32,709 nucleotides of DNA from Chlorokybus atmophyticus. Lineage: Eukaryota > Plantae > Mesostigma and Chlorokybus algae. The translations under genes and the position numbers were made by a program. The notes under the pieces were generated by a model, which worked only from the letters and a program-made list of their open reading frames with translations, was not told where the DNA came from and searched no databases. The DNA is taken from contig RHPI01000977.1 in NCBI GenBank assembly GCA_009103225.1, forward strand, positions 68,478 through 101,186. The letters run 5' to 3'. Shown here piece after piece: positions 6,731 through 27,393 of the stretch (positions are counted from its first letter, which is position 1; every line of letters begins with the position of its first letter).

Positions 6731-8069
6731 GACAAAGTGCCGCGGGCGGGAGCAGATCCGGCTCAATAAACAGGTGAACGGCATCGAACCTGTATGCATC
6801 AATGAATCATGGAATGGGTTGGGGTTGTCTTGACCTGTGAACCAGGAGACGGATGCCACCAGTGGTAGCCTGACAGTGCTACCACTGGTAGGCCTATACA
6901 CAGATTAAAATTAGAAACCATGGCGTATACCTCACATGCTCGTATACAGGGCTCCCGAACTCTTATCATGCCATCAATGCAAGCCTATCAGATGATCGCG
7001 TATCATAACATGAAAGCACATTATGCTGCACATGACATGACAGGCTATAATGAGAAGTTGATAAGGGTTTGGGAGCCCTACCATACCCCAAGTTCAATGC
7101 AATGCATGTGCATAGGCCTAGCACTGCTATCAAGGATAGCCTGCACGCATAAAGCAACTTAGGCCTAAGTGCGGGGCAGCCGCGGGCTCCATCCTGGGCC
7201 GGAGAATTCTGGCTCGTTTGAGTCTTAACAGTCGATGCTCAAGCTTGTTTGCTTAATTGCCCGGCGGCACGGCACGGTACAGCACGGCACGGTGCGGTGA
7301 GGCGGTGGGGGGCGGGCTGCAGGGTGTGCCCGCCGCAGGGCTGGAAGGGTTCTCCGGGAAGGAGGGGTGAGAAACTCAGCGCAGCAGGCGCCAGCTTCGT
7401 CCGTCAGCGCCATGCAGGGAGGCGCTGGTTAGCAAACGCAAGCGGCGCAGCTGGAAGCTATCACGCTGACCGTCTGACGTAGATGGCTGAAACTGCAAGC
7501 AATGCTTCCGCCTTCCGCAGGTGCTCTGCAGTTAGACTCTATCTGCAATGCCTCGCCACTGCTGCCTGCCCTCCACAGAGCTTGTAGCTGAACCAATTCC
7601 TCACAGCTCGTGAATGAGCATGTGTACCGCACAAAGTACCACAGGCTGATCAGCGCCTATGTGTTTTCATGCATGCGTCCGTGTACATAGCCGCATGTGT
7701 GTGTGTGTGCATGCATGCGTCTATGGACACGGACGCAGGCATGCACACTCATGCGCGCGCGCACACATGATTAAACACACATCTTCACATACAAGTCTAT
7801 ATATATGAACATGTTTGCTTCTTGCAGCCATTCAGTACTTTTAGCTGCTTGTGCGCAGCACCGTAACTTACGGTGAGCATGCTGTGGTATTTGAGTATGT
7901 GCAGTTGCTCTGTTGTCAACGTCATTAGGGCCATACTGCAGGCAGCAACAGTAATAGCTTGGTGCAGTTGCAGAGCAAGAAATTGTCGGGCACGTTGTAA
8001 ACTGTTGAACAGAAGAATCACATTGATACAGTCTGCTTCTGTAGTATTGAACTCAGCTAACAACTCTTG

Positions 8070-8259: not shown

Positions 8260-8985
8260 ATGGACCGATTGGTGATTCGGAGGCTGCCTGCAGTGCTAGC
8301 TGCTGCTACATCCATTGTTACTGGTGCCGGCTACTGGAACCACACATATCTCAATTTGGACGCTCCTTATGATGCTGCTATGGTGTAAGTTCAACTACAG
8401 CTTTCCTTGTAAAGCAAGCAGAGCATTCCTGTTGCGACAAAATGCTGCACCATGCTCATAAGATTTTGCATGTGCTGCGGCAAGTAGCGGGCAGGGACGA
8501 GAGGCAACAGGGGCACTGTCCGCGACGCCAGCGGCAATATTGACAGCAATCATCAGCTGCTGCCAGTTTGACAACCAAGACAAAGAGCGCGGAGACTTGC
8601 CGAGCAACTGCAACAAGACAACATAGACGTCATCGTGAACTTCAAGAACCAGTACAAGTCATGGCCGGCTTTCATTGCAGATGCTGCCGGCACAAAGGTA
8701 GCACTTGTCACATTATTACTGGTGGTGAACACCTTGCGCATGGTTGCTGTCATCAACAAACCCCAACTTCTGGCATCTTATGTAGTAAACAGGCACGTCT
8801 GCATGATAGCGATGCATGCTGTGATTTGCAAATCGCAATTGTTCTCATGATGCTTTAGGTGATCGTAGCCGTGTGATGAGCATTATGAGAGATTTTAATT
8901 CAGGAGCCGACCGCAGCTGATGCATTGGGGGCGGGGATGCACGACTACTACACAACGTACTGAACAAGGTTTATGAGAAGCTGAG
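8260..8985 (+). pseudogene. Decayed signal-anchor-SEFIR gene (paralog of 16716-18563), no EP part found
   Basis: Exon 1 MDRLVIRRLPAVLAAATSIVTGAGYWNHTYL...|gtaagt is homologous to MGGLASLRLHAVLAAAAAIVAVAGYWKHTHL. It is followed by ISCCQFD...EQLQQDNIDVIVNFKNQYKSWPAFI...GTK|VIVA.CDEHYERF...GAG.HDYY...NKVYEK with several frameshifts. Homology ends at ~8985. Confidence 0.85.
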
Positions 8986-9710
8986 GTAGTTGGTTCTAGT
9001 TGTTATGTTTTGTAAACAAATGCTTCTACACATGCAGACTTGCCTACCACTCTAGACACTCCAGACACTCTAGACATATGTACACCGGTTGTGTAGCGCT
9101 TCATGCTCAACTATAGGCTTTCCAGTGGCTCCTTGCAAGCAAAGCATCATCACACCAGCACAGCAAGCACACGCACAGCCATCAGCACAAGACTCTATGA
9201 CACGCACTCTTACACCCACACGGTCACAGACACGCTCACTACCAACACATGGTGCATTAAGTACGAGAAAGTTTTGTCAGGCATCCTTGGACTTATGTGC
9301 ATAACAAAGGGCAGCACTTGGTCAGCAGGTGCACCTGCTGTGCACCTGCTCACCAAATGACTGCTTGCTGCAACATGCTTTGCATGTACTTGTCGCCAAG
9401 GCATGACATGACAGATCATCTTCAGCTATCTTTGTCGCAATCACTAAGCTGGAACATATTCACACAATCTATTAATTACCTCAGCTCTGACGTTTGCCCC
9501 ACCCTTATCCACACACCGTTAAATGGCATATTATTCGGATGCCAATGACCATCATGCTGTACACGCATATTGGGTTGCATTATATGCATGCACACGAGCA
9601 GTCGATGTGCATCTCATATAAGTATCTACGTGTTGAAACTGTTCGCAGATAAAGGCTACTATGTCTCCTCACTGCCTCGCAGATTGGCAAGTGCGAGGTG
9701 GATTCAACAG

Positions 9711-10412
9711 TCAGAGAGATAGGATTACTACCCAAATGAGCCTCATCCTCCTTAACAGCTTGCGAAGTGACGTTGATGTTCCCGCTTTCTCATCAGAGAG
9801 CCGATGAGCCTCCTGCCTGAGGTCATCATCAGGCTCCCGGGCCCCTCTCACCCCAGCAGTGACGAGCTCCTCTAGTGCGTTGTCGATTGAGCTCTTATTC
9901 CTCTCAGGGTACGCATTGCGGTATGCCTGCTCCAGCAGGTAATAACGCCGCGGCCGCACAACAGCCTCAGCAACCGAGAGACGAAGGTAATGCTTGCCGT
10001 TGGAGGCATAAAAATTCGCACCCTTTTGAGAATACCAGTTGGCAATGTCGATGGGCTCCACCAGCAACCGGCGAGCCAGTTGCTTGTGGAAGAAAGAATG
10101 TCCTCTGGGATGGAACCGCGCTCGTACTGCGTTGTAACCCAATCCCAAAAGTTTTTTCAGTTTACCCCGAGCTCTCTCAATCTGTGGTGGCCGGTTCTTT
10201 TTGAAGCCAACATAGTAGTCCTGTTCGTCCTGGTACTGCTTGATAACATCCATCGCGTCATCAACACTATCGTACTTCATGGACAGCTCTGCTGTCTGCC
10301 TGTTCCGAGCATCTTCCCTGTTGCGCACAAACGCGTAGAGTCCATACAGGAACCCGAGCAAGCCAACCAGACAGGCGAGGATGCTGGGCCAGGGAGGCGC
10401 TTGTTCAGCCAT
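9711..10412 (-). CDS. Intronless 233-aa protein: N-terminal TM helix plus EP-like domain plus hydrophobic C-terminal tail
   Basis: Open frame from ATG 10412 (MAEQAPP) to the stop at 9711. Hydrophobic SILACLVGLLGFLYGLYAFV, then DAMDVIKQY...DYYVGFKK...RARGKL...RRLLVEPIDIANWYS...KHYL...RPRRYYLLEQAY (EPIDIA at 10058-10041). Ends RRMRLIWVVILSL. An upstream in-frame alternative start exists at 10487. Confidence 0.85.
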   Translation of the reverse strand: MAEQAPPWPSILACLVGLLGFLYGLYAFVRNREDARNRQTAELSMKYDSVDDAMDVIKQYQDEQDYYVGFKKNRPPQIERARGKLKKLLGLGYNAVRARFHPRGHSFFHKQLARRLLVEPIDIANWYSQKGANFYASNGKHYLRLSVAEAVVRPRRYYLLEQAYRNAYPERNKSSIDNALEELVTAGVRGAREPDDDLRQEAHRLSDEKAGTSTSLRKLLRRMRLIWVVILSL

Positions 10413-13400
10413 ATGTAGGTTGTAATGAGCCCCACGCGTGCATGCGCTCTCGTGCCCCTTTGCACAGCAGACTTTAGCACTGCGCATGCCAGCGAGTGTT
10501 AGTGTTGGTGTTCAACTACTGTCCAACCGATCCTATTGCCGTGGAGCGGAGATATTGCAACGCCCCTCAGCAGTGCGAAACGCTCCTGCCAACCAAACAG
10601 CATGCCAGACTAACTCAATGTGTGCATGCTGGCGAGCCAGATCAGCTTGAAGGGGTAAGCTGCCCTAAATCAGCACCAGCCCAGCCAAGCTGCGGCGACT
10701 CGGACTGGCAATAGTTTCATGCTACTCAGTTCAGCTGACGAGCAGAAACCATGACGCTACTCAGTTCAGCTGGCGAGAATGGTGGCGGCAACAGCTCTCG
10801 GACATGTTCACATCATGGCTTTACGTGAACCGCGCTAAACAACGTGAAATTGAAAGTCAGAAGCTAAAATGTTCTCTACAGCGGCTAGGATGGATCAAGC
10901 AATGTCAGCATTACAATGCTACGCCGGTATGCATGCATGTAAGCCAAGATTGAGCAAGCTTCGCAAGCTGTCACTGGCACTGGTGGATACACAAACAGGC
11001 AGCGCTAGCACGGACGGCTTCTTGCACCTTTTGGCTAACAAGCCGCACCAACCTCTTACGAGGTTAGGCTTCAGGCTTCCTTGCTCCAGCAAGCTCTGGA
11101 GATTGGGGACAGCTTCAGAGCCATGACACTGCGTCCAACTGACCCAGCCAGCAACCTCGGCGACCTACAGCAGCGCTCCTTTCTTCAGGCGCAAGCAGGG
11201 GTTGCCCTTACCCTTAGCCCTTCAGTGCAACGGCAGCGTCGCCGCTCACCCCCTCCTCCCTCCCGCCCCACAGCGTCAACACTGGCTCAGTCTAACGCGA
11301 GAACTCCGTCTGAGAGGTAAGATAAAGTCTTGCGGCAAGCTTGACTTTCTCTCATCGGCTACAGGTAACAAGATTCGTGTCACACGAAACATGTCGCCGG
11401 GTCATCAAGCACAAAATGGTCATAAAACAATGTCGCCTTCTGACAAAGTCTTTTTCACAAAGGTTGGACTGACAAGCATGGGCTCTGTTGGTTGGGTTTT
11501 ATTGACCGAGCCGTGAGGCGTAAGTTGGTGTTGGTGCGAGCTATGCTACAGCCGCAACCTGAATGCCTGAATGCCGAGCTAGAGGTGGGCGGAGGAGCCT
11601 GCAGGGCTGAGCTGAACCGTCATGTAGGCCGCTCTGCTGCTGGGGATAAGTGGTGCAAGCCGCCCACTACGTGACAGCGACACCCCCCTTTTCCCGCCAG
11701 CCGGCTGCGCAGAGCACCAGCTAGCATTGGCCGCAAACATGCACGATGCCCTATGCCTTCTGCTGCTGTTCTCAAGTTTGGTGTAGGCTGCGCGTGTTTG
11801 CTGCAGCTATGACAAGCTGCTTGCTTGGGCATTACTGTTCAAACCAGGATTGAATGAGTCTAGCAGAAGTTGCGTACATACTACTTCAATGTAGTATGAT
11901 ACTACATCGAAGTGCTTACGTTGCAATGACTGCAGTTAGCATAGCAAGCTGCAGCTAATAAGGAGGTTTATTGGTGGCTCAGCAGCAAGGGTTCCTAAGC
12001 CACTTTCGTACCTGCAGACAAGGCTCTAGAAGTCATAGATCCTCGTGACGCTGCGAGGTACGTCTGCAGGTACGAGTGGCTCAATAGATTGAACTAGCAG
12101 TAACTGAAAGTAGCATTGACGCGCGAAGAAGTGACTAGCCCTCGTGATATAACTCTTGCACGAAGCTGTCATGTCACTGCTTGCATTCAGGATACGCTGC
12201 TGACAACGTGACAGCAGCCAGCTCGTTGCTGTCATGTTCTCCATCACCATCATGACAGCCCTGCATTCCGCGGCCAGCATACAGTTTTCGCATGTCTTCC
12301 ATGCTGCGTTTCGGTATCTGCTGAACGGTGCACAATAGCATCATACCTGGATCTTCAGAAATGCTGCACCCTTGAACACAATATAGAAGCAATGGTTAAC
12401 ATGACTTCAAGCCTTACCATTCATACATGCAGTCCCGCGCATACATCTCTGCACGTTCTCCCCATGCATACACTACTGTCTCTCTCTCACTGACATCTGT
12501 ACAGACTTGCACGCAGTCATGATCATGCACTTTCGCTAACACACCCATCCCACAACCACCTACATTCTTACACCCCCACACACATATATTCGTTTAATCT
12601 CACACTCCCAGACAACTGAAAGCTTGAGCTGATGTCTTTCAACAAGCTTTACAAAAGGGGAAGTTCTAATGGTGTACAACACCTGGATGCTTGCATGAAG
12701 AAGTGCATACGTGCAGTGTGGGGGAATGAGAGCATGAGACGCAGGATTTGAAAAGCGGCGGAGTGGGCGGCCAACCTGCGCTGCAGCGGTGCTGGTAAGC
12801 CTGGTAAGCCGAGGTGAAGGCAGCCAGCCGCCAGGCAACGACGATGACACCTACTTCATACACGGCGAAAACGACAAGGCTGCCGTCGCCCCTCCCCCGG
12901 CCAGCACGTCCGGCTAAGTCAATCTCACTTGCCTTGACTTTTTCCTCCTCGCTACACTAGTACAGACTTATGGGGTGGAGGAGAAGAATTGGTGTTAGTT
13001 GCAATGTTTGCGTGCGATGGACGATTGCGGGTTGGCGGATGGACAACGACCGAGGTTGGGCGAAGCCTAACAGATGAATGTCGATGGACGGCTGGCTGAT
13101 TGGGTGGTTCGAAACTTCTGGTCGCCACTGTTGTGTCTGTCAATTGAGCTGGAGCATGTCAACAACCGCAAAGCGAGCTCAGCCTCAGCCTGCTTGCATG
13201 TTAAAGCCAATCTCGAATGCATGCCTCACGAGCACACAAGCACAGTCACACGCACACGGGCGCACACACGCATCCCCCCGTCCCCCCTTTTATCCATAAG
13301 CCAACGTGACCTCTGTGCGCATGCTTACCTTGCCTGGTTGCAGTACCAGTTGGTGTTTTGTTGTCGCTAGTGGCGTTGGGAGAGAGATGGCTGCGGTAGT

Positions 13401-15650: not shown

Positions 15651-15712
15651 GCAGCTGATTGAGTGTCAAGTTAGACCAGACTACCCTAATGGTTCAGGTT
15701 TATGCTGGAGAG

Positions 15713-16334
<622 letters not shown>

Positions 16335-16715
16335 NATGCGCACGCAGCAAGCTCCAGCATACACTCGCACACGCACACAGCCGAGATCACCGTCGTCCAC
16401 ATGCACGCAGCTACAGACCTCTTCACATGCATGTCCGCACGTATATGCGCACACAGAGAGACACACAGTGACGCACACACATGCAGGTATGCGCTCAGGC
16501 TTGAGTATGAGCACATCATGTCATGCACATTTTGTATAAATGCTTAGGCCCGTTTAGACATACACATGCAGACTCAAGTGGACACATATGCAGGCTCGCA
16601 AGGCTCTTCCAGCGTTCAATCTAATATAACCTGTTTTCTCAAGCTTAATTTGAGGTTTCGTCTCGTGACAAGGTAGAGTACACCTTGTCAAAAGGCGAGA
16701 GGAAGGCACCTCAAC

Positions 16716-18563
16716 TCATGAGCTCCCTTCGATGGCGTTCATCTCGTCCAATGCGTGTTGTGTTGAAGACGGTGCATCACTTTTGTTATGTTTCTCATAC
16801 TGCAGCTCTAAGAACGTGTAGTACTCTGGTCGGTTGTCCGCCTCAAGGTAATGTCGATTGCCGACAGGCCATTGCTTCCACAGCTCAAGCCGGTAGTAGT
16901 TGGCAATGTCAATTGGCTCAACCATGAGTCGAAAACTGTTGCCTCTCGCACACCAAACATTGGACTTGCTAAAAAAGTCAGCAGGCAACATGCCATCCAT
17001 GTGCCATTTGTACGTAGTACGCCAGAAGTCCCGTAGATACCTGTCAGGTTGGTGGGGGGGTTACATCAGTACTTAGCAGTTTTTCACTTTGCAATGAACT
17101 TGAACTTGAACTTGCAACTGCAATGCATGTGACCTGACCTGCGTGCGTCCTCGACTTTTTTCAAGCGCTCTGCTTGCGGGCTGCCATCACCGCCACGATA
17201 TGCTCTGAAGTCAGCATAGTAGTCTGCAGAGGTTTGCGCAAAGGCTTGTATCGTGTCCATGGCATCTTGTGCCTCATTGCGCCACTTGTCAGTAAACTCA
17301 GTTTCATGTCTCCGCTGCTCGACGACACTCAAAACGCCCATTCTCGGTGACTCTGAAGCGCTGCAAAAGTAAACGCACTGAGACTTCACTTGTTATGTGG
17401 TATCAATATGTCGTATCAACACTGCATGTCAGACGCCAATCAGGCCGCAGTGCAAACCTCTGTGGCATGGGCTGCACAAAGGCCGGAACATTTTTCAAGT
17501 GCTTGACGAGGGTGTCGTACCCAACCCAGGGAGCCTATTGCACGAGGATAGGAACAGAAGACCCGCGGACTAATTAAAGCAGCACATCATGGAATACTAC
17601 GTTGAATAGGTGCATGCTGCAAGGTCTAGCTCGTGCATCAAGGAGTGTGCACAGCTTGGAGCACCTCACTCTTTGAACTTACCTGATGACCACCAAGGGT
17701 GAAGTAGCTAAATTTCCGGATCTGCGCAGGAACATCCTTTCTTGCTCCAGGAGGCCGGAAAACGACTGGTACCAACCACCCGGAAAGGTTCTGCTCCTCA
17801 TAAACCTTGTTCAGTATGTTCGTGTACTCGTCGTGCGTCCCCGCGCCCATCTTAACAGCTGCGGTCGGCTGCTTTAATGAAAACCGCTCATAATGCTCAT
17901 CACAGGCCACGATCACCTGAAGCGTCATGAGAACACCCTCAAGCCAAGCATGCCTTGCTGTGATGCAGACGAGCCTGCTTTTTGACAATGTTGAAAGCAA
18001 ATTGCGGGAATTGTTGGTGACAGCGACCATGCGCAAGATTCACGACCAGGAATGATGTGACAACCGGTACCTTGGTGCCATTGTTCAACATCTGCCCAAC
18101 AAAAGCCGGCCAGGACTGATACGTATTTTTGTAGTCGACAATGACTTCTATATTGTTTTGTTGCAGTTGCTCGGCAAGCCTCCTCACACGCTCTGCGTGA
18201 TGCTTGTCGAACTGGCAGTAGCTGATAAACACAGTCATCTTGGCCTCTGGTGCCGCGGACAGTTCCCCTGTAGCCGCTCCTCCCTGTCCGCTATGTGCCA
18301 CAGCACATGCAAAGTACCATAAGCATGGTACAGCATCGGCAAGAAAGAAGCTTGTGCATGCTTTGCATAGAAAGCTGTAACAAAACTTACGCAACAGCAG
18401 CGTTGTTGACAGCAGCTGAGTCTTTTTCCTTATACGTATGCTTATCCTGGTGTTGTAAACTACCCGGGTGGAGATGCGTGTGCTTCCAGTAGCCAGCGAC
18501 AGCGACAATGGCTGCAGCCGCAGCCAGCACTGCATGCAGCCTCAGAGATGCCAGCCCGCCCAT
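16716..18563 (-). CDS. Intact 6-exon signal-anchor-SEFIR-EP protein, 416 aa
   Basis: Exons 18563-18391, 18290-18071, 17916-17683, 17534-17458, 17360-17139, 17040-16716 (173+220+234+77+222+325 = 1251 nt). All introns are GT-AG, phases are compatible and there is no internal stop. Protein: MGGLASLRLHAVLAAAAAIVAVAGYWK...TVFISYCQFDKHHAERV...GAGTHDEY...WLVPVVF...GYDTLVKHL...DYYADFRAY...RRYLRDFW...LPADFF...FRLMVEPIDIANYYR...HYLEADNRPEYY...EGSS*. An assembly gap lies upstream, so a further 5' exon cannot be excluded. Confidence 0.88.
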
Positions 18564-18652: not shown

Positions 18653-19136
18653 TGAGTTCATTAGCCATGCCCAAACCCACCAAGCGCTATACAGCTGCGG
18701 AAGACCAAAACGAGGGGGGGGGGGGGGGGGGGGNNNNNNNNNNNNNNNNNNNNNNNNNNNNNNNNNNNNNNNNNNNNNNNNNNNNNNNNNNNNNNNNNNN
18801 NNNNNNNNNNNNNNNNNNNNNNNNNNNNNNNNNNNNNNNNNNNNNNNNNNNNNNNNNNNNNNNNNNNNNNNNNNNNNNNNNNNNNNNNNNNNNNNNNNNN
18901 NNNNNNNNNNNNNNNNNNNNNNNNNNNNNNNNNNNNNNNNNNNNNNNNNNNNNNNNNNNNNNNNNNNNNNNNNNNNNNNNNNNNNNNNNNNNNNNNNNNN
19001 NNNNNNNNNNNNNNNNNNNNNNNNNNNNNNNNNNNNNNNNNNNNNNNNNNNNNNNNNNNNNNTGAGTTCATTAGCCATGCCCAAACCCACCAAGCGCTAT
19101 ACAGCTGCGGAAGACCAAAACGAGGGGGGGGGGGGG
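18653..19136. other. Assembly gap (N 18734-19062) flanked by an identical ~70-bp sequence ending in poly-G
   Basis: tgagttcattagccatgcccaaacc...gaccaaaacgagggg occurs at 18653-18733 and again at 19063-19136, typical of unmerged contig ends. Confidence 0.85.
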
Positions 19137-21120: not shown

Positions 21121-24017
21121 GGCAGATGGACTCCATCAAAGACCATCCCTCACCCTGGCAGTGATATTTTCTTGAGCCATAGAGGGGACGTCAAGAGGAA
21201 CTTTGTTTATTTCCTAAGCCACCTTCTTAAGCAAGCAAGTGAGCATGACCTGCTTCGTGGATGAACTTAGCTTGCAGCCTGGGGACAAAGCCTGGTTTGT
21301 GATTACCGGCAATGTATGGTCCGCTCGTATAAAAATGCATGTTCTATTGTGTAACTATGGGGACTCTTGGTACTGCTTTGAAGAGCTGCGAATTATGATG
21401 GAGGATGCAGAAAACATCGTCAAGCCCATCTTCTTTGATGATAACTTTGACAGCCTGCAAGCCATATTTTAGGAAAGTAAAAGCAGGTGAGTAGATTTGT
21501 ATACATACACACTGTCGCTCATTAAGGTAGACATGTTCCTGGTTGCAAACATGTTTCGTGCTTGCAGCGCATGCCTCAATGGTAAAGAGGAATACATCCA
21601 AAACAAATCGGCATACTGTGATGCGCTTGATATAGCATTTACAACAACGGTTCTTCATGCCTTGGCTCCGCATGCTAGACCTTGCTACAACTGATTGGGA
21701 TGGCACACTTCCTGTTCCCGACAGGGTCCGTTCAGAGCTGGTCTATCTCGAGTGGAAACGCCCGCGCTGTTCAGCCTTGAGCAATTTCTTGTGTAATGCC
21801 GCTGCATGCCAAAACTTGGTCGTCCTAATCATAGAACAAGCCGTCCATGATCATGCCTCAATGACAGTGGCTAAGTCCATAGGAAACCTCAAGGTGCTGC
21901 AAATTCTGGTGCTGCGCGGTTTTTATGATTTGAACGAGCTGCCTGAAGCGCTTGACGGGCTCACTATGCTATAGACTTTAGTTCTCTTCAGAACTGGTTT
22001 GCACATGCTACCCGAGTCTGTTGGAGGTCTCATGCATCTACAAAAACTGGACCTAGCATTAGCCTCAACTTGACGGCGCTGCCGGAGTCTGCAAATGCTG
22101 AACCTGAGCAAATGCAACAGCTTGGCGGCGCTGCCAAAGTCTTTTGGCAAACCGGCTGCCGTACAGACGCTGGACCTGAGCAAGTGCGACAGCTTGATGG
22201 CACTGCCGGAGTCCTTCGGCAAGTTGGACAACTTAGAAAACGCTGAACCAGAGCGCGTGCGACTACTTGGCGGTACTGCAGGAGTCCTTCAGCAAGCTCG
22301 CTGCTCTGCGTGAGCTAGACCCAAGCTGGTGCGCGAGTTTGGTGGCGCTGTCGAAGTCTTTTTGCAAGCTCACTGCTCTGCACAATCTGAAGCTAAACGG
22401 GTACTTCCATCTGAAGGCGCTGCCAGAAATCTTCAGTGCGCTGCATCCTGCTGTTGTTGCTTTGCTACAGCACCAGCAGGAGGCGAAGGCAAAGGCCTCG
22501 GCCGCTATCGATAATGCTGCTACTGCTGTGCAGCAGCACCAGCAGGACGCGGAGGCCAAGGCCGAGGCCGCTGTCAACCATGCTGCTACTTCGTAAGTTT
22601 AGCATGGCTGTCTTCGCAAACCATGCGCAAACTCTTGTGCGGCAAATGCTTTACCATGCTTATAACAATTTGCGTGTGCTGCGGCATATAGCGGACAGGG
22701 AAAAGAGGCGAAGTTGACAGTATTCATCAGCTACTGCCCCTTTGACAAGCATCACGCAAAGCGTGTGTGGAGGCTTGTTGAGCAACTGCAACAAGATAAA
22801 GTACCCGTCATTGTCGACTACAAATCTGGATACCAATCATGGCCAGCTTTTATTGGGCAGATGTTTAAGGATGGCACAAAGGTACCAATGGTCACATCAT
22901 CTCTGATAGTGTAGAACATCTTGCGCATCGTGGCTGTCATCATCCATTCCCATCTTACATAGATTATATAGTAAGCAAGCACGTGAGCATGACAGACATG
23001 CATGCTTGGTTTCCGGTTGTTAACATAACGTTTCAGGTGGTGGTGGTTTGTGATGAGCATTATGAGCGATTTTCATCAAAACAGCCACCCGCAGCCGATA
23101 GGATGGGCGCGGGGACGCACGACGAGTACACGAACATACGAAACAAGGTTTATGAGGAGCAAAATCTTTCCGGGTGGTTGGTTCCAGTCATCTTCCGCCC
23201 CCCCGGAGAAAGAAAGCACGTACCAACGCTCATTCGAAATTTGGCTACTTCACCCTTGGCGATCAGCATGCAAGTTTAAAGGGGGAGGTGCATTTGCTTC
23301 ACGCTATGCAAACCTTTATGCACGAGCAAGACTTTGTAGCATGCGCTCAGTCTTTCTGAATGGTCTTACATGACGTCTGCGTTAGTAACTCCGTGGCTCT
23401 TTCGATGCCATCCTCATGCAATGGTAACCCTGGGCTGGGTACGACACCCTCATCAAGCACTTGGGAAGTGTGCCGGCCTTCATGCCCATGTCACACAGGT
23501 TTGCATTGCAGCCCACTTGACCTGCAGTGTTGACCTACCATGACATCCATAGTCCTAGAGCATTGTATATTGCAACGCTTCAGAGCCACAGAGAGTGGTC
23601 GAATCGCGTATTGCCACGCAGCAAAGCCATGAAACAGAGTTTGCTAACATGTGGCGCAAGGAGGTATAAGACGCCATGGACACATAACAGCCTTTTTGCT
23701 GACCTCGGCAGACTTCTACGCTGACTTCAGAGCATATTATGGCAGTGATGGCAGCCCGCAAGCAAAGCGCTTGAGAAGGGTCGACCGTGCACGGAGGTTA
23801 AGATTTGCGCAATTGAACGCTTGCTCGGTACTGTTATGACCTCCCCACCAACCTAACAGGGTTACACGGGACTTCTGGCGTATAGCATACAAGTGGTACA
23901 TGGATGGCATGTTGCCTATTTTTTCAGCAAGTCCAGTGTTTGGTTTGTGAGAGGCAACACGACGCGACTCATGGTTGAGCCCATTGACATTGCCAATTGG
24001 GCTCGAGCTGTGGAAGA
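21121..24017 (+). pseudogene. TIR-(NB-ARC deleted)-LRR-SEFIR-EP(truncated) relic, copy 2 of the fusion NLR
   Basis: TIR DIFLSHRG.DVK...TCFVDELSLQPG...SWYCFEEL...KPIFFDD. TIR exon 2 runs out of frame directly into MPWLRMLDLATTDWDG at ~21650. Shortened LRRs, SEFIR exons (22700-23490), and EP up to LMVEPIDIANW (23977-24000). Many stops and frameshifts. Confidence 0.9.
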
Positions 24018-26715
24018 TGTCATGCCTATTGCCCGCGCATACCAGCTATTATCGAGCATGCCTACATCGAAACCATCGTCCGGCCTACCAGCATACCAAC
24101 TCGCGCGCGTCACTGATCAGTAGCTAGGTCATGACTCTAGAGTAGCTCACGACCAGAGCCTACATAGGCACCGCGCGTAGCTGTTCAGTTGTGAGTTCGG
24201 TTATAAGTGGTGTTCTATATCAAGTGGTGATTGCTGTGGAAATAGCCTCGAAGTAACTGTTAGCTGTTCTGAACAGTCATGATTTGACTTGTATAAGTAG
24301 TCACGGTATTCACCGGATCAGCTGGTGACACTGTGAGTGAGAAAGCTAAGAGCTTGTGAAGCGACTTGAATGGCTAGCACGACATTCCGGTTATTACTGA
24401 GAAACCCCTCACTATGTGAGAGCCTGTGGATGCTCGTGTGCATCGTGCTTGTCATTGCTGTGAGCTTGGTGTGCCTGGTTGCAGTGTGCTTGTTGGCATC
24501 AATCAGGGCATAGTATCCACGTGTTGCTTGCTCATTCACCTCACTAAATAGTATAACACATTTTCCGCTCATGCAAAGAATTGTGTAAACAGCACTACCT
24601 ATAGTAGTGGCTTGTTGACTCACAGTGTCACCCTCTGTGCTCAAGTCAGTGCGTCGTATTCTGCATCAGAGCGTGCAGTCTATATCTGGGGACACATCCA
24701 TGTGCATTCGTTGTCACTGTCATCACATAATGCACACACAAGCACTAGTGTGGTGAGTGGTAGCGGCATCAAGACAGGCGGTAGAGCACAAACACTCTAC
24801 CCTGCATACACTTTAACACTATGATGGCTTTTGTACTATATATAGTACTTGTACTATAGGAAGTACTGAAAAACAGACTTTTTGGGCCACCAGGTTATAA
24901 GAAGTAAATTAATTTGTTAATTAACATATCCTATATGGTTAAACTCAAAATTTGAAGGAGAACACGGGAAAATTGTCCTTAGAAATTTATTGCTTAATAG
25001 TCAACTAGGTCTGCAATTTCAAAGTCAAGTCTAAACTGCGTTTTTTGGGTATTTTTCGCCCATTTTGGCGGCGCTTTCAGCAGTGAGTTAGCCCCGCTCC
25101 TAGCAAGCTCTGGCGGCTGAAAAGCCCTGGCGATGGCGTCCTCATCGGAGGCAGCGGCGGCGGCGGCGGATAGGTCCAGGGGTTGGGTAGGTAGGAAGGT
25201 GAAGGCCCCAGCTACTTACTGGACAGTAGCGTGGGCTAAGGCAGAGTTTGGGGCAGCTTGGCAAGTTGCCTACATTGATGGGCACGTTGTGGGCTTCAAG
25301 CAGGGGCCCACAACGAGCGGCGATAGCTGGGAGGTGTGGTGGGCATATGACGGCACCAATGGCTTGCTTGCCTTGAATGCCATGCTATCCTACCTTCAAG
25401 AAGAAGAGGGCGACTCACGTCAGCAGCAGAAGGGTGGGGAGGACTTAGCAAGCCTCTTGCATGCGTTAGATGATAGGCTGGAGGAGGAAGAGGAGTGCTT
25501 GCCAGAGGAAGAGGAGCAGCGCCTGCCAGAGAGTGAAGAAACGGAGATAGAGGAGGATGAGGAACTGAACAGTAAACATAAGGGAAGGATGAGGGAGAGA
25601 GGCAAAGGGAGAGGCAGGGGAGGCAGGGGGCGTGGAGTTGCAGCTGGTTGCGGAGCAGGGAGAGGGAGGGGAGGAGGGAGAGGCTCATCCCAACCAACTG
25701 TGCCACGCGGGTCAGGCAGGCCGAGGGGGAGGGGGCGGGCGCCGCGCGCGCATGTGCGTGTCAGCCTGCGCCAGCCGCTGGACAGTGAGGACGAGGTGTC
25801 TCCTGATTCTGCAAGCAGCGAGGATGAAGCCCCCACCGGTAGGTATTGCGTGCACATGCATGCGCTCAACAGAATACATCACAACCCACACAACACTTAT
25901 TGTTGACTACACTCACAGGCATGGATGAAGATGTAATTGGCAGTGCATATGATGATGAGGAAATCGATCCGCGTGCTGTTCGTTGGCGTGTGGGTGGAGA
26001 GGATGAAGTGTACAATTGGCTTGCTGCTGATTCTTTCGTGGGTCATACGGGTCCGTGCATTCAAGACTTGAGTGGTAAAAACCCCTTGCAACTCTTCCTC
26101 CTCTTCTTGCCATTGGTTTTTTGGGATCATGCGGTGATGTAAACCAACCTATACGCTAGCGCCCAACGCACACACCTTGATGTTGAAGCGGGTCGTGCTG
26201 GATTCCTGTCACACGTCAAGAGTTGTTGCAATGGGTGGGTCTCACGCTAGCCATGGCATGTCACACATTAAATGACATGCAATCTCATTGGCGCACCGGT
26301 CTAATGGGGGCAATCACATTTCCTAACGTTGCACGGTGTATGCCATTCAAACGCTATCAAGCCATAAAACGCTACTTTCACCTTAATGATAATAGCCAAC
26401 GCCCTAGTGAACATGCTACACGTGAGTACCGGCTATGGCACATACTACCCGTAATCAACACACTACGTGACACATTCCGCAAGAACTATAAGCCTGGTAA
26501 ACACATTACTATTGATGAGTGCACCATGCCTATACGCAATAAGACGTGCCCTATTCATAAATACAACTCTAGCAAACCTTACAGGTTCGGTATTGAAGTG
26601 TTCCAAGCATGTGACTCGGACACATACTATTGCTATGATTTTATAGTATATGACAAGCTACCTAGGCACGAGTTGCACACATGGGTAGTGAAAGAACTAG
26701 TAGCTAATGTGCCAT

Positions 26716-27393
26716 ATGAGGGGAAGGAGGGGGGCACAGGGGAACTGATTGGCTGAAGGGGGAGTGATTGCGAACTACAAAGCACGTACTTTCGGGCTGC
26801 TTCTCCCACCGGACGAGAGTCGAGTTGGTTGTGGACGAGTTGCTCTTGCAGCTCTCGAACAAACTCCATGCGTGTGTACGTTGGGTTTGCGTGCACAAAG
26901 CAAACCCACACGTTAGCAATTGCCCCATCAAACAGGCCCCACTATGCTCGGTGCCACCATGTCACCGCCTTCGATTGCTTTTGTATACTATAGTTTGTCT
27001 TTAAGCAATACTTGTCATATTGATCAACGGCATCCTTGTGTAGGTTGTATACGACGGCGCACTCCGGAGCAACAACATCCGCACGCCGACCATCGGTTTG
27101 CAAACGACTCACAACATCATGACTCACACCATGACTTGTGGATAGAAAGAAGACGGGCTGCTTATCCTTCAAACACACCGCAATCAAGCCATCACTAGGG
27201 GCAATAGCACACTTGAATGTTCCTTGCACGTCGTGATTGTCTAGAATTACCATACTAGAAGGATAACCAACACGGTTAGCTAGTATAGTGCCTGTGCCAT
27301 AGTGTCCACGTGATCTCAACCATAGTAGTACTTTAGGTGAAGTGAAGCCTCAATCTAGGACAATGTGGTGATGTCCTCCCTCCTTCCCCTCAT
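26716..27393 (-). other. 678-bp internal inversion bounded by perfect 16-bp inverted repeats
   Basis: atgaggggaaggaggg at 26716-26731 and ccctccttcccctcat at 27378-27393. Flipping the segment restores the frame ...VPYEGKEGGHHHIVLD*GFTSPKVLLWLRSRG. Confidence 0.9.

What the first reader, a model, noticed from the sequence alone, without database searches (positions are those of the whole stretch)
9711..10412. Stand-alone intronless TM-EP gene: a second, highly divergent EP paralog and possible heterodimer partner
It shares only motif-level similarity with the SEFIR-linked EPs (AMD.I..., DYY..F[KR], L[LM]VEPIDIAN[WY]Y, HYL, RP..Y, SS...AL[ED]E). It keeps RPRRY, matching the seed-plant RPxRY whose Arg (recalled as Arabidopsis EDS1 R493) lines the signalling cavity, while the SEFIR-linked copies have RPEYY or RTEYY. 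EDS1-family proteins work as heterodimers, so two membrane-anchored, asymmetric EP proteins 6 kb apart may pair (inference).
Basis: partly seen in the sequence, partly recalled or inferred. Interest (0 to 1): 0.82.

Follow-up and report, generated by a model that had tools for sequence, protein, structure and literature searches.

The report
Damaged copy of algal membrane-anchored EP gene

Summary
The 233-codon ORF is real. It lies on the minus strand at 9711-10412 and has an N-terminal membrane helix, an LLVEPIDIANWY motif and an RPRRY motif.

Compared with its only close relatives, two Chlorokybus proteins, the window copy has three changes:
- one extra A at about 10152;
- 16 nt missing at 10070/10071;
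- 2 nt missing at 9745.

As a result, residues 87-114 are out-of-frame filler and the family's stop codon is lost. The true reading, NFWDWVTTQYERGSIPEDIL..., sits in another frame. None of these indels appears in any public-run contig covering those sites (no contig bridged the 16-nt site). The copy is therefore either recently damaged or mis-assembled.

The intact family is a genuine lipase-less short EP domain:
- Pfam EDS1_EP scores 55.6 bits.
- The AlphaFold model fits PAD4 at Z 16.6 and 1.5 Å.

This membrane-anchored family forms its own clade, apart from the SEFIR-linked EPs. The same membrane helix plus short EP design recurs in at least 10 other environmental protein clusters.

RPRRY does align with the PAD4 R420 / EDS1 R493 position, but RPxRY is the consensus of the whole family. 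The heterodimer idea could not be tested and has little support. The scan had already found intact membrane-anchored EP genes elsewhere in this genome.

The parts
9711..10412 (-).
   Evidence: ORF listed. There are no joints inside it in the laid contigs. Its only close relatives are Chlorokybus P0001 (84% identity) and P0002 (74%).
10326..10391 (-). N-terminal membrane helix, residues 8-29. The basic stretch after it suggests that the EP domain faces the cytosol (inference).
   Evidence: Kyte-Doolittle 19-residue mean 2.29, with RNREDARNR on the C-terminal flank. AlphaFold gives a long helix from residue 8. The equivalent helix is present in P0001-P0005 and P0008.
10155..10325 (-). In-frame N-terminal part of the EP region, residues 30-86 (AMDVI, DYYVGFK, ...ERARGKLK).
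   Evidence: Aligns residue for residue with P0001 and P0002.
10152..10157 (-). A6 run carrying one A more than every public contig that covers it. This is the first frame break (+1).
   Evidence: In one search table 4, all depth at this site lacks one A, including a contig otherwise identical to the window over 10103-10251 (X2 record 15; X1 depth 580).
10071..10154 (-). Out-of-frame stretch. The ORF reads KLLGLGYNAVRARFHPRGHSFFHKQLAR (residues 87-114). The neighbouring frame (10073-10153) reads the conserved NFWDWVTTQYERGSIPEDILSSTSNWL.
   Evidence: The alternative frame (10070-10153, which adds the Ala codon) is 26/28 identical to P0001. Reading it through with X at the breaks raises the family-HMM score from 65.9 to 108.6 bits, and from 36.2 to 68.0 bits with the model built from long EDS1-family-like proteins.
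10070..10071 (-). Junction of a 16-nt deletion relative to the relatives. The codons for (A)RGNNY are lost. This second break (-16) restores the ORF frame.
   Evidence: P0001 and P0002 read WLARGNNYRLLVEP. Contigs coming from 9970-10070 continue with the reverse complement of ATAGTTGTTG, which codes NNY (table 7). The window DNA reads TGGCTCGC|CGGTTGC.
9747..10070 (-). In-frame C-terminal part: RLLVEPIDIANWY, HYL, RPRRY (9942-9956), SSIDNALEE and an acidic/helical tail.
   Evidence: Identical at protein level to P0001 over this span. RPRRY aligns with AtPAD4 RPKRY, residues 417-421.
9714..9746 (-). Eleven-residue tail MRLIWVVILSL, created by a 2-nt deletion that removes the family's stop codon (relatives end ...LLRRR*).
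   Evidence: table 4: 'TC put in behind 9745' in all depth of X1 and X2. This gives AGG AGG AGA TGA on the gene strand. P0001 ends RRR.
11211..11267 (-). Upstream block similar to the N-terminal extension of the P0002 gene model. In the window it carries a stop, so it is probably a 5' UTR exon ahead of an intron.
   Evidence: tblastn of P0002 residues 32-51 gives 80% identity with an in-frame stop. A GTAAGG donor-like site is visible. Joints 10450>11068 and 10460>11239 appear, but they come from relatives' contigs.
8375..8980 (+). Neighbour: a degenerate SEFIR pseudogene convergent with the TM-EP ORF. It is not part of the TM-EP gene.
   Evidence: tblastn with the window's SEFIR ORFs gives three frames, in-frame stops and 36-63% identity.
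16716..18563 (-). Neighbour: the SEFIR-EP gene 6.3 kb away, the proposed partner. It reads RPEYY.
   Evidence: P0009 (Chlat1 Chrsp103S01043) is 88-94% identical over its exons.

Best explanation
The locus is a copy of a Chlorokybus gene family that encodes small proteins of about 230 aa. Each has one N-terminal membrane helix followed by a lipase-less 'short EP' domain, equivalent to the first ~160 residues of the EP domain of EDS1/PAD4/SAG101.

In this assembly the copy carries three indels relative to all its relatives: +1 A at about 10152, -16 nt at 10070/71 and -2 nt at 9745. The first two cancel each other. The ORF therefore stays open, but 28 residues in the EP core are out-of-frame filler, five residues are missing, and the stop codon is replaced by an 11-residue tail.

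Shown: family membership, the frame break, the EP fold of the intact relative, and the separate clade.

Unresolved: whether the indels are recent mutations, making this a young pseudogene or crippled allele (about 60%), or assembly errors over an intact gene (about 30%).

Inferred mechanism for the intact family: the helix tethers a cytosolic EP module to a membrane. There, alone or paired with another EP module, it would bind nucleotide signals made by the neighbouring SEFIR/TIR enzymes and pass them on. This would be an EDS1-like receiver without the lipase domain.
For: Frame break:
- P0001 and P0002 read ...GKLKNFWDWVTTQYERGSIPEDI(F/L)SSTSDWLARGNNYRLLVEPID..., where the window ORF reads ...GKLKKLLGLGYNAVRARFHPRGHSFFHKQLARRLLVEPID.
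- The neighbouring frame of the window is 26/28 identical to P0001.
- Family-HMM scores are 65.9 bits for the ORF, 108.6 bits for the read-through with X at the breaks, and 145 bits for P0001.
- Pfam EDS1_EP gives 21.6 bits for the ORF (below the 23.1 threshold) and 55.6 bits for P0001.
- In the public-run contigs, every contig covering 10152 lacks the extra A and every contig covering 9745 has the extra TC. Contigs entering from the 3' side of 10070 carry the NNY codons.
- The exact ORF, as 233 or 258 aa, is absent from a 15-billion-protein collection.
- Upstream of the break, the window and the P0002-like contig differ by 4 non-synonymous and 6 synonymous changes in codons 4-49. This points to past purifying selection and recent damage.

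EP identity of the family:
- phmmer of P0001 against the PDB hits PAD4 at 4e-8, EDS1 at 1e-7 and SAG101 at 8e-5.
- The AlphaFold model has pLDDT 83.9.
- Its top 24 Foldseek hits are all EDS1/PAD4/SAG101.
- VIA-align gives Z 16.6, rmsd 1.5 Å over 131 residues against PAD4 293-452. The next unrelated fold scores Z 6.4.

Family and clade.

Link to TIR-type genes:
- The window holds SEFIR-EP genes and a TNL.
- An unrelated environmental contig has a TNL, an EP gene and a TIR-only gene within 12 kb.
Against: - The ORF is still open, which would need some luck. The other two frames of the coding sequence hold 8 and 14 stops.
- Pieces identical to the window are present at high depth in runs that look like RNA, so the locus or a twin is probably transcribed.
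- AlphaFold still models the out-of-frame stretch as helix, though pLDDT falls to 73-75 and the PDB fit degrades to E 4.8e-3 and rmsd about 11 Å.
- No contig bridging the 16-nt junction was seen in either form.
- The runs are only guessed to be RNA, and their strain identity with the window is not known.
- Ligand binding, membrane location and any pairing are untested.
Confidence: 0.6

Rival explanations
1. Assembly artefact. The real locus is an intact third TM-EP paralogue of about 238 aa, like P0001. The extra A, the missing 16 nt and the missing TC would be consensus errors in a repeat-rich, gap-containing assembly of near-identical paralogues.
For: - A contig identical to the window over 10103-10251 differs only by lacking the extra A, and no run shows any of the three window-specific indels.
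- The window has N gaps flanked by poly-G runs (ORF translations), which suggests modest assembly quality.
- The 3' half is almost identical to a relative at the nucleotide level, with 1 difference in about 190 coding nt, whereas the 5' half differs at 9 of 158. A chimeric consensus would produce this pattern.
Against: - A 16-nt loss is not a typical polishing error.
- The window also has private single-base differences at 9602, 9650, 9716, 9739 and 9879, as expected of a genuinely distinct sequence.
- No contig was shown that is window-like and also carries the 16 nt.
Confidence: 0.3
2. The 233-aa protein as written is a working, highly divergent EP paralogue that heterodimerises with the SEFIR-EP protein 6 kb away to form an asymmetric, membrane-bound EP-EP signalling cavity.
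For: - TM-EP and SEFIR-EP genes lie together in this window.
- Judging by gene names, they also lie together on Chlat1 scaffolds Chrsp114 (S01646, S01650, S01653) and Chrsp103 (JGI ids 626 and 627).
- The short EP covers segments that line the seed-plant pocket: the positions of EDS1 H476 and R493 and of PAD4 R314 and F387 fall within or at the edge of the aligned range.
- The ORF is open and probably transcribed.
Against: - The EP core of this copy is frame-shifted. It loses the nearly invariant FWD...LP.DF...W..RG..Y block.
- R versus Y at the R493 position does not mark partners, since both EDS1 and PAD4 keep the Arg.
- The lipase-like domain that seed-plant dimers depend on is absent (an LLIF variant in that domain fails to bind PAD4).
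- Gene clustering is equally well explained by tandem duplication in an immune-gene cluster full of pseudogenes.
- No interaction test was possible.
Confidence: 0.08
3. A chance ORF or non-gene. The EP-like motifs would be coincidental.
For: Pfam alone is sub-threshold on the ORF.
Against: - The ORF is 84% identical to an annotated Chlorokybus protein that passes Pfam at 55.6 bits.
- It matches EP exons elsewhere in the window with E as low as 5e-8.
- Expressed relatives exist.
Confidence: 0.01

Closest known systems
EP domain of seed-plant EDS1 / PAD4 / SAG101 (Pfam PF18117; PDB 7XDD, 7XEY, 4NFU, 8ZF0)
   Same: - Same helical fold: Z 16.6, rmsd 1.5 Å over 131 residues against AtPAD4 293-452 for the intact relative.
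- Same core motifs: FWD, LP.DF, W..RG..YR.LVEP.DIANYY, HYL, RPxRY.
- The Arg at the EDS1 R493 / PAD4 R420 position is kept.
   Different: - No lipase-like alpha/beta-hydrolase domain.
- Only the first ~115-124 of the 211 Pfam positions are matched.
- An N-terminal membrane helix is present instead.
- The organism is a streptophyte alga, not a seed plant.
- This particular copy is frame-broken inside the domain.
Chlorokybus SEFIR-EP / LRR-SEFIR-EP / EP-TIR proteins (e.g. Chlat1 Chrsp103S01043, Chrsp114S01646, Chrsp5S06985; window 16716-18563)
   Same: - Same short EP module, 33-38% identical over ~104-140 residues.
- Same genome and the same gene clusters.
   Different: - They form a separate EP clade.
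- Their EP is fused to a SEFIR or TIR enzyme domain, whereas here it stands alone behind a membrane helix.
- They read RP(E/D)YY or RPVQY instead of RPRRY.
Short EP-domain proteins of other green algae and environmental eukaryotes (e.g. Elliptochloris bilobata KAK9825429.1, named 'EDS1 EP domain-containing protein' in UniRef; P0012, P0017, P0028, P0069, P0098 ...)
   Same: - Lipase-less short EP that passes Pfam's threshold.
- At least 10 clusters at 50% identity share the layout of an N-terminal membrane helix plus short EP in 186-254 aa.
- One EP gene lies between a TNL gene and a TIR-only gene.
   Different: - They are only 25-40% identical to the Chlorokybus TM-EP clade and fall on other branches.
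- Most of their source organisms are unknown.
[quoted passage not shown]
Bacterial signal-activated membrane effectors (a ligand-sensor domain joined to membrane helices, as in CBASS or Pycsar systems). This is an analogy recalled from general knowledge and was not tested.
   Same: The layout is a small-molecule-sensor-like domain tethered by membrane helices, encoded next to nucleotide-signal-producing TIR-type enzymes.
   Different: There is no sequence relation: the PADLOC scan found nothing. The genes are eukaryotic. Membrane disruption is pure speculation here.

Membership tests
Pfam EDS1_EP domain (PF18117) | HMM score at or above the gathering threshold of 23.1 bits | tested here: not met
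   The window ORF as written scores 21.6 bits, E 1.8e-4, and only residues 98-141 match profile positions 52-99. The intact relatives pass: P0001 55.6 bits and P0002 49.6 bits.
Pfam EDS1_EP domain (PF18117) | The ancestral reading of the locus (frames joined with X at the breaks) matches EP profiles | tested here: met
   With HMMs built here without Chlorokybus sequences, the read-through scores 108.6 bits against 65.9 for the ORF. With a model built only from long EDS1-family-like proteins, the scores are 68.0 against 36.2.
Pfam EDS1_EP domain (PF18117) | All-helical EP fold that superposes on solved EDS1/PAD4/SAG101 structures | tested here: inconclusive
   Met for the intact relative: top 24 Foldseek hits are all EDS1/PAD4/SAG101, with Z 16.6 and 1.5 Å. 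The model of the window ORF still lists the family first, but only at E 4.8e-3 and rmsd about 11 Å.
Pfam EDS1_EP domain (PF18117) | Full-length domain (211 profile positions) | tested here: not met
   Only positions ~10-99 (P0001) up to ~4-124 (other short EPs) are matched. Structurally this corresponds to PAD4 293-452 of 541.
EDS1 protein family (EDS1/PAD4/SAG101) | N-terminal lipase-like alpha/beta-hydrolase domain | tested here: not met
   There is no lipase hit. The protein starts with a membrane helix, and EP follows about 30 residues later.
EDS1 protein family (EDS1/PAD4/SAG101) | Positively charged residue at the EDS1 R493 position (RPxRY) | tested here: met
   RPRRY (residues 153-157) aligns with AtPAD4 RPKRY 417-421. 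PAD4 R420 is described as the counterpart of EDS1 R493 (PMC6377607).
EDS1 protein family (EDS1/PAD4/SAG101) | Exclusive heterodimer that forms an EP-EP ligand pocket | not testable with these tools
Chlorokybus TM-EP clade (P0001-P0005, P0008) | N-terminal membrane helix followed by a stand-alone short EP, placed in this clade | tested here: met
   The window ORF aligns in A1 with a shared helix and shared EP motifs. Its closest relatives P0001 and P0002 sit in the clade with SH-aLRT 88.
Chlorokybus TM-EP clade (P0001-P0005, P0008) | Uninterrupted reading frame through the EP core and the family stop codon | tested here: not met
   Three indels of +1, -16 and -2 nt relative to relatives and to all public contigs.

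The most novel reading that the evidence does not exclude
Intact members of this family may be membrane-bound EDS1-like receivers that need no lipase domain. Two short EP modules would close a pocket around a nucleotide made by the adjacent SEFIR/TIR enzymes and trigger a response at the membrane. The pair could be TM-EP with TM-EP, or TM-EP with a SEFIR-EP encoded next door. That would place the TIR-to-EP signalling logic of seed-plant immunity at the base of the streptophytes and in other algae.
Probability: 0.15. Interest if true: 0.85.

Novelty: new variant of a known kind. Interest (0 to 1): 0.45.

Why it matters
Papers read here treat the EP domain as defining the EDS1 family and as confined to seed plants. 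One preprint notes only 'short EP-like sequences' in green algae.

A family of membrane-anchored, lipase-less EP proteins with a confident EP fold is therefore of interest. It is encoded beside SEFIR/TIR and TNL genes in Chlorokybus, and the same layout recurs in other environmental eukaryotes. It offers a concrete handle on how TIR-derived signals might be read outside seed plants.

This particular locus adds less. It is the damaged or mis-assembled member, and intact copies exist elsewhere: Chlat1 Chrsp114S01653 and S01650, and other pieces of this genome already noted by the scan. Its main use is as a warning that the open 233-codon frame hides a compensated frameshift. It is also one more example of TM-EP and SEFIR-EP genes sitting together.

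Tried and rejected
- The C-terminal 66 residues (window 9873-10070) searched alone against PDB sequences gave no hit. The piece is too short.
- The look-up of encoding contigs for P0001 found nothing on record, so the DNA and neighbourhood of the intact paralogues could not be fetched.
- An exact look-up of the 233-aa and 258-aa ORFs found neither in the collection.
- I checked whether Chlat1 proteins are encoded in the window. None is 100% identical; the best are 94% for SEFIR-EP and 84% for TM-EP. The window may therefore come from another assembly or strain, or from unannotated loci. I left this unresolved.
- I considered that the ORF might be the front of a longer TM-EP-TIR/SEFIR gene. I rejected this because the only SEFIR-like sequence downstream (8375-8980) lies on the opposite strand and is degenerate. 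P0001 and P0002 are also stand-alone.
- I considered a 3' intron at TGG|GTAGTA (about 9730). I rejected this because a contig runs unspliced over 9572-9936.
- Sub-threshold Pfam hits (DUF4760, Cas_Csd1, ZapB) are most likely due to composition or the membrane helix. The PADLOC scan found nothing, apart from one ZorA hit at E 0.03 on the helix of P0008.
- AlphaFold on the window ORF did not discriminate sharply. The filler is still modelled as helix.
- Literature searches for EP + EDS1 + SEFIR found no paper. Searches for EDS1 + Chlorokybus found two papers, one mentioning algal EP-like sequences only in general terms; the other was not opened.
- Read laying is capped at one call, so I could not go back to look for a contig bridging 10070/10071.

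Full report
**What is at the coordinates.** The minus strand of 9711-10412 holds an ORF of 233 codons plus stop.
- Residues 8-29 form a strongly hydrophobic helix (Kyte-Doolittle mean 2.29), followed by a basic stretch.
- Within the window, the ORF matches the EP-coding exons of two SEFIR-EP loci, at 16740-16946 and 473-637, with E 5e-8 and 2e-7. Those loci read RPEYY and RTEYY where this ORF reads RPRRY.
- A fourth EP fragment lies on the plus strand near 23920-24000.
- Pfam places the ORF just below the EDS1_EP threshold: 21.6 bits against 23.1, with only residues 98-141 matching.

**The frame problem.** A word-based search of 5.8 billion protein clusters found only two relatives, both from Chlorokybus atmophyticus (JGI Chlat1): Chrsp114S01653 (P0001, 258 aa) and Chrsp114S01650 (P0002, 331 aa).
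- Both read ...GKLK-NFWDWVTTQYERGSIPEDI(F/L)SSTSDWLARGNNY-RLLVEPIDIANWY... The window ORF reads ...GKLK-KLLGLGYNAVRARFHPRGHSFFHKQLAR-RLLVEPIDIANWY....
- The neighbouring frame of the window (10153-10070) translates to NFWDWVTTQYERGSIPEDILSSTSNWLA, which is 26/28 identical to P0001.
- The window therefore has one extra A in the run at 10152-10157 and lacks 16 nt at 10070/10071. Together these shift the frame and restore it 82 nt later.
- A further 2-nt loss at 9745 removes the family stop (RRR*) and adds the tail MRLIWVVILSL.
- Removing only the extra A would give a stop after 179 residues.
- HMMs built here from non-Chlorokybus relatives score the ORF at 65.9 bits, the read-through (X at each break, no letters added) at 108.6 bits, and P0001 at 145 bits. 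A model built from 18 long EDS1-family-like proteins gives 36.2, 68.0 and 90.1 bits.
- The lost block holds the nearly invariant FWD / LP.DF / W..RG..Y columns of the whole family.

**Is the damage real?** I laid the contigs of four public runs on 8400-12400.
- Runs X1-X3 are only guessed to be RNA. They have no depth over 9338-9471 or 10544-10677 (X1 none from 8936) but hundreds-fold depth (X1) over the gene, which fits RNA.
- Pieces identical to the window exist (10238-10395; 9880-10038), alongside contigs 6-10% different. By their amino-acid changes, the main set of divergent contigs is P0002-like.
- Every contig covering 10152 has one A fewer. This includes one that is otherwise identical to the window over 10103-10251.
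- Every contig covering 9745 has the extra TC.
- Contigs entering from the 3' side of 10070 continue into NNY codons.
- The exact ORF is not in a 15-billion-protein collection.
- Upstream of the break, codons 4-49 differ from the P0002-like contig by 4 non-synonymous and 6 synonymous changes. The lineage was therefore under constraint until recently.
- My split is about 60% a recent, real defect, about 30% assembly error over an intact gene, and under 10% a working protein as written.

**The family is a true, short EP domain.**
- P0001 passes Pfam EDS1_EP at 55.6 bits, matching profile positions 10-99 of 211.
- By sequence alone it hits solved PAD4 (4e-8), EDS1 (1e-7) and SAG101 (8e-5).
- An AlphaFold model of P0001 residues 31-258, built with 110 aligned relatives, has mean pLDDT 83.9 and pTM 0.72.
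- Its 24 best Foldseek matches in the PDB are all EDS1/PAD4/SAG101 chains.
- VIA-align gives Z 16.6 and rmsd 1.5 Å over 131 residues against AtPAD4 293-452. The next unrelated fold scores Z 6.4.
- The model of the window ORF keeps high overall pLDDT (84.7). However, pLDDT falls to 73-75 over the filler, and the model fits the same structures only at E 4.8e-3 and rmsd about 11 Å.

**Wider relatives.** An exhaustive phmmer search of 1.84 billion representatives found 107 proteins at E<=1e-3.
- The top eight are all Chlorokybus.
- They comprise more TM-EP proteins (Chrsp231S03548 and S03549, Chrsp121S01800, Chrsp103S00004), a truncated SEFIR-EP-like protein (Chrsp258S03871), SEFIR-EP (Chrsp103S01043), LRR-SEFIR-EP (Chrsp114S01646) and an EP-TIR-EP protein (Chrsp5S06985).
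- A maximum-likelihood tree puts the six Chlorokybus TM-EPs on one branch (SH-aLRT 88) and the SEFIR/TIR-linked EPs on another (95). The long seed-plant-type proteins form a third group (92). Deeper order is unresolved. 'A second, divergent EP lineage' is therefore correct.
- Outside Chlorokybus, at least ten 50%-identity clusters of 186-254 aa share the N-terminal membrane helix plus short EP. All pass Pfam's threshold, and all match only the first ~4-124 profile positions.
- One sits on a 678-kb contig beside a LINE-type reverse transcriptase, which indicates a eukaryote.
- A short EP gene without a called helix lies between a TNL gene and a TIR-only gene on a metagenome contig.
- A 142-aa EP protein from the chlorophyte Elliptochloris bilobata is already named 'EDS1 EP domain-containing protein' in UniRef.

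**RPRRY.** In the phmmer alignment, RPRRY pairs with AtPAD4 N416-RPKRY-421.
- Bhandari et al. 2019 state that PAD4 R420 has a sequence and structural environment highly similar to EDS1 R493, but lies outside the cavity, and that R420A has no effect (PMC6377607).
- EDS1 R493 and H476 contact the TIR-derived ligand (bioRxiv 10.1101/2022.05.02.490369).
However, RPxRY is the consensus of the whole alignment and of most hits.
- TM-EP thus keeps the ancestral state and the SEFIR-linked copies are the derived ones. Because both seed-plant partners keep the Arg, the difference says nothing about pairing.

**Heterodimer idea.** No tool here predicts complexes.
- In favour: TM-EP and SEFIR-EP genes are neighbours in this window. 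Judging by gene names, they are also neighbours on Chlat1 scaffolds Chrsp114 and Chrsp103. The short EP spans segments that line the seed-plant pocket.
- Against: this copy is broken. The lipase-like domain on which seed-plant dimers depend is missing. The cluster is full of duplicates and pseudogenes, including the SEFIR pseudogene at 8375-8980 and a stop-containing LRR-SEFIR-EP at 21654-24006, so tandem duplication explains the proximity equally well.
- I put a specific TM-EP/SEFIR-EP heterodimer at roughly 0.1, and any EP-EP pairing in the family at about 0.15.

**Known or new.**
- Papers read here describe EP proteins as confined to seed plants (PMC10834447) and the EP domain as what uniquely defines the EDS1 family (PMC9806590).
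- Kennedy et al. [quoted passage not shown]
- I found no paper describing a membrane-anchored EP protein or a SEFIR-EP fusion.
- Earlier notes of this scan describe intact TM-EP, TM-EP-TIR and SEFIR-EP genes on other pieces of the same genome. The family was therefore found before on other DNA. I used those notes as leads only.
- My verdict: the family is a new variant of a known kind, and this locus is its damaged or mis-assembled member.

Noticed in passing
window 8375-8980 (+): A degenerate SEFIR pseudogene, spread over three frames with in-frame stops, lies convergent with and only ~0.7 kb from the TM-EP ORF. Contigs from the public runs also map here, partly from paralogues.
   Followed up: partly
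window 21654-24006 (+): A fourth EP-bearing locus: an LRR-SEFIR-EP copy 70-86% identical to Chlat1 Chrsp114S01646 (P0010), with at least one in-frame stop before the SEFIR part. Its EP fragment RLMVEPIDIANW lies at 23920-24000.
   Followed up: partly
window 26223-26756 (+) and 26942-27319 (-): A PiggyBac-type transposase fragment (Pfam DDE_Tnp_1_7, E 2.5e-21) lies inside the immune-gene cluster. The minus-strand ORF was not scanned.
   Followed up: no
window 15700-16350: A (CT)n/(GA)n microsatellite about 650 bp long, with strong GC and AT skew.
   Followed up: no
window ~7950-8060 and ~18700-19060: Assembly gaps (N runs) flanked by long poly-G / poly-C. This is a sign of modest assembly quality and bears on whether the TM-EP indels are real.
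   Followed up: no
L002 569-12514 (JGI metagenome 3300060285 contig): In an unrelated environmental eukaryote-like contig, a 1019-aa TIR-NB-ARC-LRR gene, a short EP gene (P0011) and a 210-aa TIR-only gene lie within 12 kb. This is the same trio of gene types as in Chlorokybus.
   Followed up: partly
P0006 (Chlat1 Chrsp5S06985, 640 aa): One Chlorokybus protein has an N-terminal membrane helix, an EP domain (80-177), a TIR domain (267-423) and a second EP-like region at 532-616.
   Followed up: no
window 10413-10487 (-): The stretch upstream of the ATG at 10412 is homologous to the N-terminal extension of the P0001 and P0002 gene models, but in another frame. Relatives' contigs carry a 1-nt insertion at 10415-10417. 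This is either 5' UTR or a fourth frame difference.
   Followed up: partly
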